Origin: Octopus bimaculoides | Lineage: Eukaryota | Direction of reading: 5' to 3' | Length of the DNA: 64,000 nucleotides | Assembly (NCBI RefSeq): GCF_001194135.2 | Contig: NC_068991.1 | Span: forward strand, 52,407,294-52,471,293 | Shown here: positions 22,654 to 22,884 of the stretch, piece after piece | Numbering within the stretch: position 1 is the stretch's first letter | How the letters are laid out: every line of letters begins with the position of its first letter | Program-made: the position numbers and the translations under genes | Notes under the pieces: model-generated | Seen by the model: only the letters and a program-made list of their open reading frames with translations | Told to the model about the DNA's origin: nothing | Database searches by the model: none

Positions 22654-22884
22654 TATTCTGTTGTGTCTGGGAAGAGTCATTTTCTTATCGTGCCTTAAAA
22701 TTTAACACACTCACCGTTAAAATTTCCACTTATTTCCACTCTAGAGAGTCAAGACTATTGAAAAGGTTGCAAGACGCAACGAAAATTTTAGGAAAATAAA
22801 AATAATAAGTGGAAATTTTAATGGTGAGTGTGTTAAATTTTAAGGCACGATAAGAAAATGACTCTCCCCAGACACAACAGAATA
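22654..22884. mobile_element. Palindromic element (~80-bp arms); Penelope-like remnant or MITE
   Basis: Arms 22656-22734 and 22804-22882 are near-perfect reverse complements; the spacer carries a hammerhead-like fold; TA on both flanks. Confidence 0.7.
22755..22791 (+). ncRNA. Minimal type I hammerhead ribozyme-like motif (U3-A8 variant)
   Basis: CTA-TTGAAAA-G-GTTGC(AAGAC)GCAAC-GAAA-ATT-T-TAG: stem I CTA/TAG, 5-bp stem II, GAAA, palindromic AATT stem III. Confidence 0.5.

What the first reader, a model, noticed from the sequence alone, without database searches (positions are those of the whole stretch)
22654..22884. Second, unrelated palindrome whose loop holds a hammerhead with a compensatory U3-A8 core
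Seen: ~80-bp inverted arms enclose CTA-TTGAAAA-G-GTTGC-AAGAC-GCAAC-GAAA-ATT-T-TAG (22755-22791). The core differs from CUGANGA at exactly positions 3 (C to U) and 8 (G to A). Established: C3 and G8 form a tertiary Watson-Crick pair in hammerheads and U3-A8 variants are known to retain activity. Stem II, GAAA, palindromic stem III (AATT) and a 3-bp stem I are all in register. Unlike the 61.5-kb case the motif lies in the unpaired loop and is free to fold. Inference: a second Penelope/retrozyme-like family with a covarying ribozyme core.
Basis: partly seen in the sequence, partly recalled or inferred. Interest (0 to 1): 0.72.

Follow-up and report, generated by a model that had tools for sequence, protein, structure and literature searches.

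The report
Truncated Penelope-like insertion with variant hammerhead
The palindrome is a short retroelement fragment that was copied next to an inverted partial copy of itself, and the unique middle carries one copy of a minimal hammerhead-ribozyme motif of a variant (U3-A8) already described in Penelope-like retroelements, so it is a credible but ordinary new example and probably an inactive relic.

Summary

The motif is unlikely to be chance. A minimal-hammerhead descriptor expects 0.002 (U3-A8) to 0.03 (any 3/8) hits per window, and finds only this site and the 61.5-kb palindrome.

The palindrome is not a discrete palindromic transposon. The right arm belongs to a dispersed repeat ("X", three copies in the window) whose homology runs unbroken across the arm end to about 22935. 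The left arm is an inverted partial copy of X. A 21-nt target-site duplication (22418-38 / 22939-59) brackets a SINE, the palindrome and the X end.

An inverted 5'-truncated copy, a one-sided tail and a sense-strand hammerhead near the 3' end together match published Penelope-like element (PLE) insertions. The extra base between positions 9 and 10.1, the G10.1-C11.1 pair and the palindromic AAUU are hallmarks of PLE "min-HHRs". The U3-A8 covariant was reported in Schistosoma PLEs in 2014.

Three things could not be tested: conservation or covariation (no other copy covers the motif, and no outside sequence was retrievable), a PLE reading frame, and cleavage. There is no tandem partner, so this is not a retrozyme. 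Verdict: new member of a known kind.

The parts
22418..22438 (.). Left copy of the target-site duplication, AATATATTTTATGTTTTCTTA
   Evidence: Local alignment with 22939-22959 matches 20 of 21 positions. None of 2000 shuffles reached this score.
22439..22650 (+). Copy of an abundant ~210-nt SINE-like repeat. It lies inside the duplication, and its 3' end is 3-5 nt from the left arm.
   Evidence: BLAST of the left flank finds 23 further copies of this repeat in the window at 67-85% identity. Copy ends are aligned.
22654..22734 (-). Left arm: an inverted, 5'-truncated partial copy of repeat X (equivalent to 22804-22884), lacking the tail
   Evidence: 81 nt, 98% complementary to the right arm. 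An HMM built only from the other two X copies hits it in reverse orientation, E = 4.6e-4.
22722..22740 (+). 10-nt tandem duplication ATTTCCACTT / ATTTCCACT at the arm/loop junction
   Evidence: Tandem Repeats Finder: period 10, 1.9 copies, 100% matches. Read as a slippage or template-switch scar (inference).
22735..22803 (+). The 'loop': unique sequence between the arms, read as the extra 5' stretch of the forward copy
   Evidence: It has no counterpart in the inverted copy and no significant homology upstream of the 16.2-kb copy.
22755..22791 (+). Minimal type-I hammerhead-like motif with a U3-A8 core. The predicted cut is after U17, between 22788 and 22789.
   Evidence: Sequence. Descriptor hit, with a chance expectation of 0.002-0.03 per window. 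No Rfam hammerhead match at E up to 10.
22804..22884 (+). Right arm: the body of the forward X copy
   Evidence: The HMM from the other two X copies aligns 22804-22936 continuously, E = 2e-16.
22885..22935 (+). 3' 'tail' of X, present only on this side of the palindrome, ending ...CAAACCAAATCCAAAAA
   Evidence: 78-82% identical to the other two X copies, which is higher than in the arm part.
22939..22959 (.). Right copy of the target-site duplication, AATATATTTTATGTTTTCCTA
16169..16309 (+). Second copy of repeat X. It starts at about the position equivalent to 22797 and has no inverted partner.
   Evidence: nhmmer; alignment A1.
54868..54993 (-). Third copy of repeat X. It is 5'-truncated at about the position equivalent to 22817-22820 and flanked by a 10-nt duplication, TTCTTTTTAT.
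   Evidence: nhmmer. Duplication, p = 0.0145.

Best explanation
The locus is one retrotransposition product, not a DNA-transposon palindrome.

A short dispersed retroelement end, here called X, was inserted in the + orientation. Its 3' end lies at about 22935, next to the right copy of a 21-nt target-site duplication. An inverted 5'-truncated copy of its own body (22654-22734) sits directly at its 5' side, and that inverted copy lacks the 51-nt terminal tail. This is the arrangement described for Penelope-like elements (PLEs): strong 5' truncation, an adjacent inverted truncated copy, and a tail at one end only.

The 'loop' is simply the part of the forward copy that reaches further 5' than the inverted copy. 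It carries, on the sense strand and about 100-150 nt from the 3' end, a PLE-type minimal hammerhead (min-HHR) of the U3-A8 covariant class.

In a master element such motifs sit in the flanking pseudo-LTRs. They are thought to act as dimers between neighbouring copies to cut long or tandem transcripts after position 17. At this locus there is one copy only, so it is most likely an inactive relic.

Shown here: the anatomy, the uninterrupted homology across the arm end, the target-site duplication, the motif and its rarity by chance. Inferred: PLE affiliation, the origin of the inverted copy (template switching or priming from both nicked strands), the co-insertion of the SINE by template switching, and any catalytic activity.
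For: 1. Arms and motif are as described.
2. X has three copies in 64 kb. An HMM built without this locus aligns 22804-22936 in one piece across 22884|22885 (E = 2e-16) and hits the left arm in reverse.
3. A 21-nt direct repeat brackets 22439-22938 (0 of 2000 shuffles reached its score). The 54.9-kb copy has its own 10-nt duplication exactly at its ends. This is retroposon behaviour with variable 5' ends.
4. The motif is expected 0.002-0.03 times per window, and it lies on the sense strand of X.
5. All features reported to emerge in PLE min-HHRs are present: an unpaired base between positions 9 and 10.1, G10.1-C11.1, a palindromic 15.2-16.2 with no helix III, and a short helix I (PMC4209133).
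6. The same paper reports the U3-A8 covariant in Schistosoma Cercyon PLEs, with about 1300 hits that are mostly single motifs.
7. The PLE insertion anatomy is described in PMC8557442.
8. A second, unrelated foldback at 61.5 kb carries a canonical-core min-HHR of identical architecture in each arm. So this genome does host such elements.
Against: - No PLE reading frame was found. The window has no GIY-YIG-like motif, and its only reverse transcriptase looks LINE-like.
- No other copy of X reaches the motif, so conservation and covariation are untested.
- Rfam hammerhead models give nothing at E up to 10. They also miss the canonical-core 61.5-kb motif, so this is weak evidence.
- Helix I is only 3 bp (probability 0.15). 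Helix II is 5 bp, against the 6-8 bp reported. Part of the core is predicted to pair elsewhere.
- The tail is 51 nt, against the published 30-40 nt.
- A SINE lies inside the duplication and needs an extra template switch to explain.
- The three other X 5' ends fall 9-31 nt downstream of the predicted cut. This could also mean that X is a short element in its own right and the loop is unrelated filler.
Confidence: 0.6

Rival explanations
1. X is the 3' end of an ordinary non-LTR retroposon (a LINE tail or a short SINE-like unit). The inverted copy arose by snap-back or template switching of the reverse transcriptase. The hammerhead-like string in the spacer is a coincidence in A-rich sequence.
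For: - The target-site duplications and variable 5' ends fit any target-primed retroposon.
- LINE reverse-transcriptase and AP-endonuclease fragments are present in the window, but no PLE frame.
- The 5' ends of the other copies cluster at about 22797-22820, as expected for a short element whose normal start lies 3' of the motif.
- There is no Rfam hit.
Against: - The chance expectation is 0.002-0.03 per window even with positions 3 and 8 left free, yet 3/8 is a Watson-Crick pair and 10.1-11.1 is G-C.
- The motif is on the sense strand.
- LINE 5' inversions made by twin priming invert a different, upstream segment rather than duplicating the same 81 nt.
- A second element with the same motif architecture lies in the same window.
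Confidence: 0.25
2. A miniature inverted-repeat DNA transposon (Tc1/mariner-type) with 79-81-nt terminal inverted repeats, a TA target duplication and a meaningless loop.
For: - The arms are long and nearly perfect.
- TA lies at both outer ends (22654-55, 22883-84).
- A pogo/Tc5-like DNA-binding fragment exists at 40.4-40.9 kb, although it scores below Pfam's threshold.
Against: - Homology with the other copies does not stop at the supposed terminus. It continues 51 nt beyond it at higher identity (78-82%), and those copies have no left arm.
- There is no second copy of the 231-bp unit in the window.
- A 21-nt duplication brackets a larger unit.
Confidence: 0.05
3. The hairpin itself is the functional product. 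If transcribed, the 81-bp stem would be a Dicer substrate (a hairpin-RNA, endo-siRNA or young miRNA-like locus), and the loop sequence would be irrelevant.
For: - The fold has a minimum free energy of -139.5 kcal/mol, z = -23.
- There are sub-threshold structural matches to long-hairpin miRNA precursor families in Rfam.
Against: - All the Rfam matches are far below their gathering scores (for example 92 against 245 bits), which is consistent with matching any long hairpin.
- There is no evidence of transcription.
- This reading does not explain the origin of the structure.
Confidence: 0.05

Closest known systems
Minimal hammerheads (min-HHRs) of Penelope-like elements, including the U3-A8 covariant of Schistosoma mansoni Cercyon PLEs (Cervera & de la Pena 2014, PMC4209133)
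   Same: Type-I topology. The core boxes are kept apart from a paired 3/8 swap. There is one unpaired base between A9 and 10.1, a G10.1-C11.1 pair, no helix III but a palindromic 15.x-16.x tract, and a very short helix I. It occurs as a single motif in a truncated copy.
   Different: Helix II is 5 bp (6-8 bp reported) and helix I is 3 bp (4-5 bp typical, 2 bp in Drosophila virilis). The host genome and the element family differ. No link to a PLE reading frame was shown here.
PLE insertion architecture (Craig et al. 2021, PMC8557442): 5'-truncated copy, adjacent inverted 5'-truncated copy, one-sided 30-40-bp tail
   Same: A forward copy plus an immediately adjacent inverted truncated copy forms an inverted repeat. 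A terminal extension is present at one end only. There is a hammerhead near the 3' end and a target duplication of variable length.
   Different: The tail is 51 nt. The whole insertion is only about 280 nt. A SINE copy lies inside the same target duplication. No pseudo-LTR tandem was seen.
Non-LTR retrozymes of animals (Cervera & de la Pena 2020, PMC7229834)
   Same: A type-I hammerhead in AT-rich repetitive DNA, probably PLE-derived.
   Different: Retrozymes are head-to-tail tandem arrays of 150-450-bp units, each with a hammerhead, and they give circular RNAs. Here there is one motif and no tandem array.
L1 5' inversions by twin priming, and reverse-transcriptase snap-back hairpins (from general knowledge)
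   Same: An inverted segment at the 5' side of a target-primed insertion, lying inside one target duplication.
   Different: Twin priming inverts an upstream part of the template. Here the same 81 nt are present twice.
Tc1/mariner-type MITEs
   Same: Size of about 230 bp, long inverted arms, TA at both ends.
   Different: The arm end is not a repeat boundary, and the other copies are one-armed.

Membership tests
PLE-type minimal hammerhead (min-HHR) | Core boxes N3-U-G-A-N-N8-A and G-A-A-A, with positions 3 and 8 able to form a Watson-Crick pair | tested here: met
   UUGAAAA at 22758-64 and GAAA at 22781-84. U3-A8 replaces C3-G8, and there are no other core changes.
PLE-type minimal hammerhead (min-HHR) | [quoted passage not shown] | tested here: met
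   G22765.
PLE-type minimal hammerhead (min-HHR) | G10.1-C11.1 closing pair of helix II | tested here: met
   G22766-C22780. The descriptor did not require this pair.
PLE-type minimal hammerhead (min-HHR) | No helix III; palindromic 15.2-16.2 so that two copies can form helix III together | tested here: met
   A15.1 A15.2 U16.2 U16.1 = AAUU at 22784-87.
PLE-type minimal hammerhead (min-HHR) | Helix II of 6-8 bp and helix I of 2-5 bp | tested here: inconclusive
   Helix I is 3 bp, within the range. Helix II is 5 bp, one short of the reported range. Helix II forms with probability about 1.0 and helix I with probability 0.15.
PLE-type minimal hammerhead (min-HHR) | A second copy nearby (in tandem or within the pseudo-LTRs) to allow the dimeric active form | tested here: not met
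   This motif occurs once in the 64 kb. The inverted copy ends before reaching it. Most published hits are likewise single motifs in truncated copies.
PLE-type minimal hammerhead (min-HHR) | Conservation with compensatory changes among copies of the family | not testable with these tools
   No other copy in the window covers 22755-22791. All collection scans and protein routes returned nothing from this or a close species.
PLE-type minimal hammerhead (min-HHR) | Self-cleavage after position 17 | not testable with these tools
   This needs an in vitro transcription assay.
Rfam hammerhead families (covariance models) | A score at or near the gathering threshold | tested here: not met
   No hammerhead family matches at E up to 10 in 22500-23050. 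The canonical-core motif at 61.5 kb is also missed, so these models do not cover min-HHRs.
Penelope-like element insertion | Copies share the 3' end and differ at the 5' end (5' truncation); flanking target duplication | tested here: met
   The three copies end at ...CAAACCARATMCAAAAA and start at different points. The duplications are 21 nt and 10 nt.
Penelope-like element insertion | An inverted 5'-truncated copy directly at the 5' end, with the tail at one end only | tested here: met
   The left arm is inverted X without 22885-22935. The tail is 51 nt, against the published 30-40 nt.
Penelope-like element insertion | Reading frame with a PLE-type reverse transcriptase and a GIY-YIG endonuclease in full-length members | tested here: inconclusive
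   None is in the window. A regular-expression scan found no GIY-YIG-like motif, and the only RT looks LINE-like (RVT_1). The full-length element, if it exists, lies outside the window.
Non-LTR retrozyme | Head-to-tail tandem repeats of 150-450 bp, each with a type-I hammerhead | tested here: not met
   Tandem Repeats Finder shows no such array in 21500-23400. The motif occurs once.
MITE (Tc1/mariner-type) | The ends of the terminal inverted repeats coincide with the ends of homology among copies; TA duplication | tested here: not met
   Homology continues 51 nt past the right arm. The other copies lack the left arm. There is no second 231-bp copy.

The most novel reading that the evidence does not exclude
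The hammerhead is, or recently was, active in vivo and defines the length of most copies of this family.

The three other X 5' ends in the window fall 9, 16 and about 31 nt downstream of the predicted cut at 22788|22789. These are the 16.2-kb copy, the inner end of the inverted copy, and the 54.9-kb copy. This is what would be seen if the reverse transcriptase usually ran off self-cleaved RNA, with this forward copy as the rare product of an uncleaved template.

A genome-wide pile-up of copy starts just after U17 would be a natural footprint of min-HHR cleavage in vivo. That activity has been barely detectable in vitro, and its role in PLEs is still called unclear.
Probability: 0.15. Interest if true: 0.55.

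Novelty: new member of a known kind. Interest (0 to 1): 0.3.

Why it matters
If the reading is right, this adds a new host lineage and a new element family to the U3-A8 class of Penelope-type minimal hammerheads. It also shows that two unrelated 'palindromes' in one window are both by-products of the peculiar PLE insertion mechanism rather than palindromic transposons. That is useful for repeat annotation, because such foldbacks are easily mis-called as MITEs or miRNA hairpins. It does not change what is known about hammerheads. The only route to a larger result is the genome-wide test of whether copy 5' ends pile up at the predicted cleavage site.

Tried and rejected
1. Chance motif. I expected the relaxed core, the extra G and the missing helix III to make the motif trivial. 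Shuffles showed otherwise, and the literature showed that these 'defects' are min-HHR hallmarks.

2. MITE with a TA duplication. Rejected because the homology runs across the arm end.

3. Insertion of the palindrome into the SINE. Rejected because the SINE ends at about 22648-50, before the arm.

4. Shared 3' end between the SINE and X, which would suggest a common mobilising enzyme. The similarity is not above the shuffled level.

5. Sequence relationship between X and the 61.5-kb element. None found.

6. Homology of the loop with sequence upstream of the 16.2-kb copy. Not significant.

7. Getting more copies from outside the window.
   - Scans with the arm, X and motif patterns returned nothing: the arm and X patterns in metagenome contigs, all three in viral contigs, and the X pattern in genome contigs.
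   - RT homologues are at most 62% identical, and their loci lack both the SINE and X.
   - The TGF-beta-propeptide reading frame is not on record. Its only relative is 58% identical.
   - A SINE-consensus peptide search found nothing.

8. A covariance model built from the two motifs. Abandoned because MAFFT misaligned the two sequences.

9. Energy of the double-hammerhead dimer. It cannot be evaluated, because the structure is a pseudoknot in dot-bracket notation.

10. Simple snap-back priming through the ATTTCCACT repeat. It does not reproduce the observed register (my own reasoning).

Full report
**Setting.** The window is an AT-rich (36% G+C), N-gapped draft assembly full of microsatellites. 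It carries LINE-type reverse-transcriptase and endonuclease fragments, a TGF-beta-propeptide exon and a very abundant ~210-nt SINE-like repeat. It is therefore an animal genome, probably an invertebrate. I could not identify the species. Neither it nor any close relative is represented in the collections I could reach.

**The observation.**
- The arms are 22654-22734 and 22804-22884: 81 nt, 98% complementary, 69 nt apart.
- In hammerhead numbering it reads as follows:
  - helix I: CUA / UAG (3 bp)
  - core: U3 U4 G5 A6 A7 A8 A9
  - one unpaired G
  - helix II: GUUGC / GCAAC, with G10.1-C11.1 and a 5-nt loop
  - G12 A13 A14
  - A15.1 A15.2 U16.2 U16.1 = AAUU
  - U17, then helix I.
- The predicted cut is between 22788 and 22789.

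**Is it chance?** I first thought so, because the match needs two core changes, an inserted base, no helix III and a 3-bp helix I.
- A descriptor with just these liberties was run on 1500 dinucleotide shuffles that keep local composition. It gives 0.002 hits per window for U3-A8 and 0.03 when positions 3 and 8 may be anything. Whole-window shuffles give 0.003.
- Core plus helix II plus GAAA alone is expected 0.13 times. The remaining constraints therefore carry most of the weight.
- The real window gives only two loci, even when one further core mismatch is allowed: this one and the 61.5-kb palindrome. The 61.5-kb palindrome has a canonical CUGAAGA core and the same architecture.
- The descriptor was written after seeing the motif, so these figures are optimistic. 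Even so, a chance origin is not the easy explanation.
- Rfam's hammerhead models find nothing at E up to 10. They also miss the canonical-core motif at 61.5 kb, so they do not cover this class.

**What the palindrome is.**
- There is no second copy of the 231-bp unit in the window.
- The right flank and the right arm together resemble two other places, 16.2 kb (+) and 54.9 kb (-).
- A profile built from those two copies alone aligns 22804-22936 in one piece (E = 2e-16), straight across the supposed terminus 22884|22885. It also hits the left arm in reverse orientation (E = 4.6e-4).
- Identity is higher in the 51 nt outside the palindrome (78-82%) than inside it.
- The right arm is therefore part of a dispersed repeat, X, which ends at about 22935 in ...CAAACCAAATCCAAAAA. 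The left arm is an inverted partial copy of X that lacks those last 51 nt. This excludes a MITE whose ends are the arm ends.

**Insertion signature.**
- A 21-nt direct repeat, AATATATTTTATGTTTTC(T/C)TA, lies at 22418-38 and 22939-59. None of 2000 shuffles reached its score.
- It brackets, in order, a SINE copy (22439-22650), the inverted X copy, the loop, the forward X copy and its tail.
- The 54.9-kb copy is shorter at its 5' end. It has its own 10-nt duplication, TTCTTTTTAT, exactly at its ends (p = 0.0145), 10 nt downstream of a tRNA-like gene.
- X therefore behaves as a target-primed retroelement end with variable 5' truncation.
- At the arm/loop junction there is a 10-nt tandem duplication, ATTTCCACTT / ATTTCCACT. 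I read it as a scar of template switching, but I could not derive the exact register from a simple snap-back model.

**Comparison with the literature.**
- Craig et al. 2021 (PMC8557442) describe PLE insertions as highly 5'-truncated. [quoted passage not shown] A 30-40-bp tail is often present at one end only, and hammerheads lie near the 3' ends.
- Cervera & de la Pena 2014 (PMC4209133) describe the PLE 'min-HHR'. [quoted passage not shown] The present motif has the last three. The first cannot be tested here.
[quoted passage not shown] A descriptor with that core gave about 1300 hits that 'mostly occurred as single motifs'. They also found dual min-HHRs on opposite strands 100-700 bp apart, which matches the 61.5-kb element.
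- The C3-G8 tertiary pair is established (Martick & Scott 2006 and later work, as summarised in PMC3884650).
- I could not retrieve the primary paper on the activity of 3/8 exchanges.

**Best explanation (confidence about 0.6).**
- The locus is a truncated PLE-type, or PLE-mobilised, insertion.
- It consists of a forward copy (22735-22935), an adjacent inverted truncated copy (22654-22734) and a one-sided tail (22885-22935), all inside one target duplication.
- The 'loop' is the extra 5' stretch of the forward copy. It is nearly filled by a sense-strand U3-A8 min-HHR.
- The motif has no partner for dimerisation. In the published work a single min-HHR showed no detectable cleavage, and dimers cleaved only weakly. 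Here helix I is marginal and part of the core is predicted to pair elsewhere. I therefore regard this copy as a relic rather than a working ribozyme.
- The SINE inside the duplication is best explained by a further template switch of the reverse transcriptase onto a SINE RNA. That is inference only.

**Rivals.**
- An ordinary LINE or SINE-like retroposon with a snap-back copy and a coincidental motif (about 0.25). This stays open because no PLE reading frame is in the window and because no other copy reaches the motif.
- A TA-flanked MITE (about 0.05). Contradicted.
- A hairpin-RNA locus (about 0.05). This concerns possible downstream use, not origin. The Rfam miRNA-family matches are far below threshold and reflect only the long stem.

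**An untested lead.** The other three X 5' ends fall 9-31 nt after the predicted cleavage site. That fits reverse transcription of self-cleaved RNA. It equally fits a short element with its own start, so only a genome-wide count can decide.

**Verdict.**
'Penelope-like with a U3-A8 hammerhead' is the best reading. 'Retrozyme-like', 'palindromic element' and 'covarying' are not shown.
- The variant is already in the literature, so this is a new member of a known kind, of modest interest.

Noticed in passing
window 61376-61627 (motifs at 61507-61542 + and 61444-61479 -): This near-perfect foldback has 96-nt arms 1 nt apart, plus outer arms. Each arm carries a canonical-core minimal hammerhead, GAU CUGAAGA A GGAAU UGUA AUUCC GAAAUAU C AUC. 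It has the same architecture as the 22.7-kb motif (unpaired base after A9, G10.1-C11.1, palindromic AUAU, 3-bp helix I). The expected chance count is about 0 to 0.003 per window. It looks like a head-to-head pair of truncated PLE ends, and it is unrelated in sequence to X.
   Followed up: partly
window 51514-51792: This is a third palindrome (90-nt arms, 94% complementary). Its 99-nt centre consists largely of telomere-type repeats in both orientations: CCCTAA/CCTAAC repeats at about 51617-51655 that run into CCCTAGGGTTAGGGTTA. Endonuclease-deficient PLEs are reported to carry reverse-complement telomeric repeats next to hammerheads. No hammerhead-like motif was found here by my descriptor.
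   Followed up: no
window 55010-55101 (-): Rfam finds a tRNA-like gene here (38.8 bits, above the gathering score), but ARAGORN does not. It is 92 nt long, so it may contain an intron, and it is followed by a T-run. An X copy is inserted 10 nt downstream of that T-run.
   Followed up: no
window, 24 places, e.g. 22439-22650, 53540-53748, 4298-4507, 32157-32375: A very abundant ~210-nt SINE-like repeat, about one copy per 2.7 kb, with copies 67-85% identical. Its consensus has one fully open antisense reading frame. Several copies lie in inverted pairs (e.g. 32210-32335 / 33067-33192 and 3837-3965 / 4329-4457). No relative was found in the protein collection.
   Followed up: partly
window 22722-22740: A 10-nt tandem duplication, ATTTCCACTT / ATTTCCACT, lies exactly at the junction of the left arm and the loop. 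The repeated unit is the reverse complement of AAGTGGAAAT at 22807-22816. The mechanism is unresolved.
   Followed up: partly
window 40381-40890 (-): An open reading frame with a weak, below-threshold match to the Tc5/pogo transposase DNA-binding domain. This suggests that pogo-like DNA transposons also occur in this genome.
   Followed up: no
window 61718-62347 (+): A first coding exon of a BMP/TGF-beta family gene: signal peptide, a long serine run and the TGF-beta propeptide. Its only retrievable relative is 58% identical and comes from unnamed sequencing runs.
   Followed up: partly
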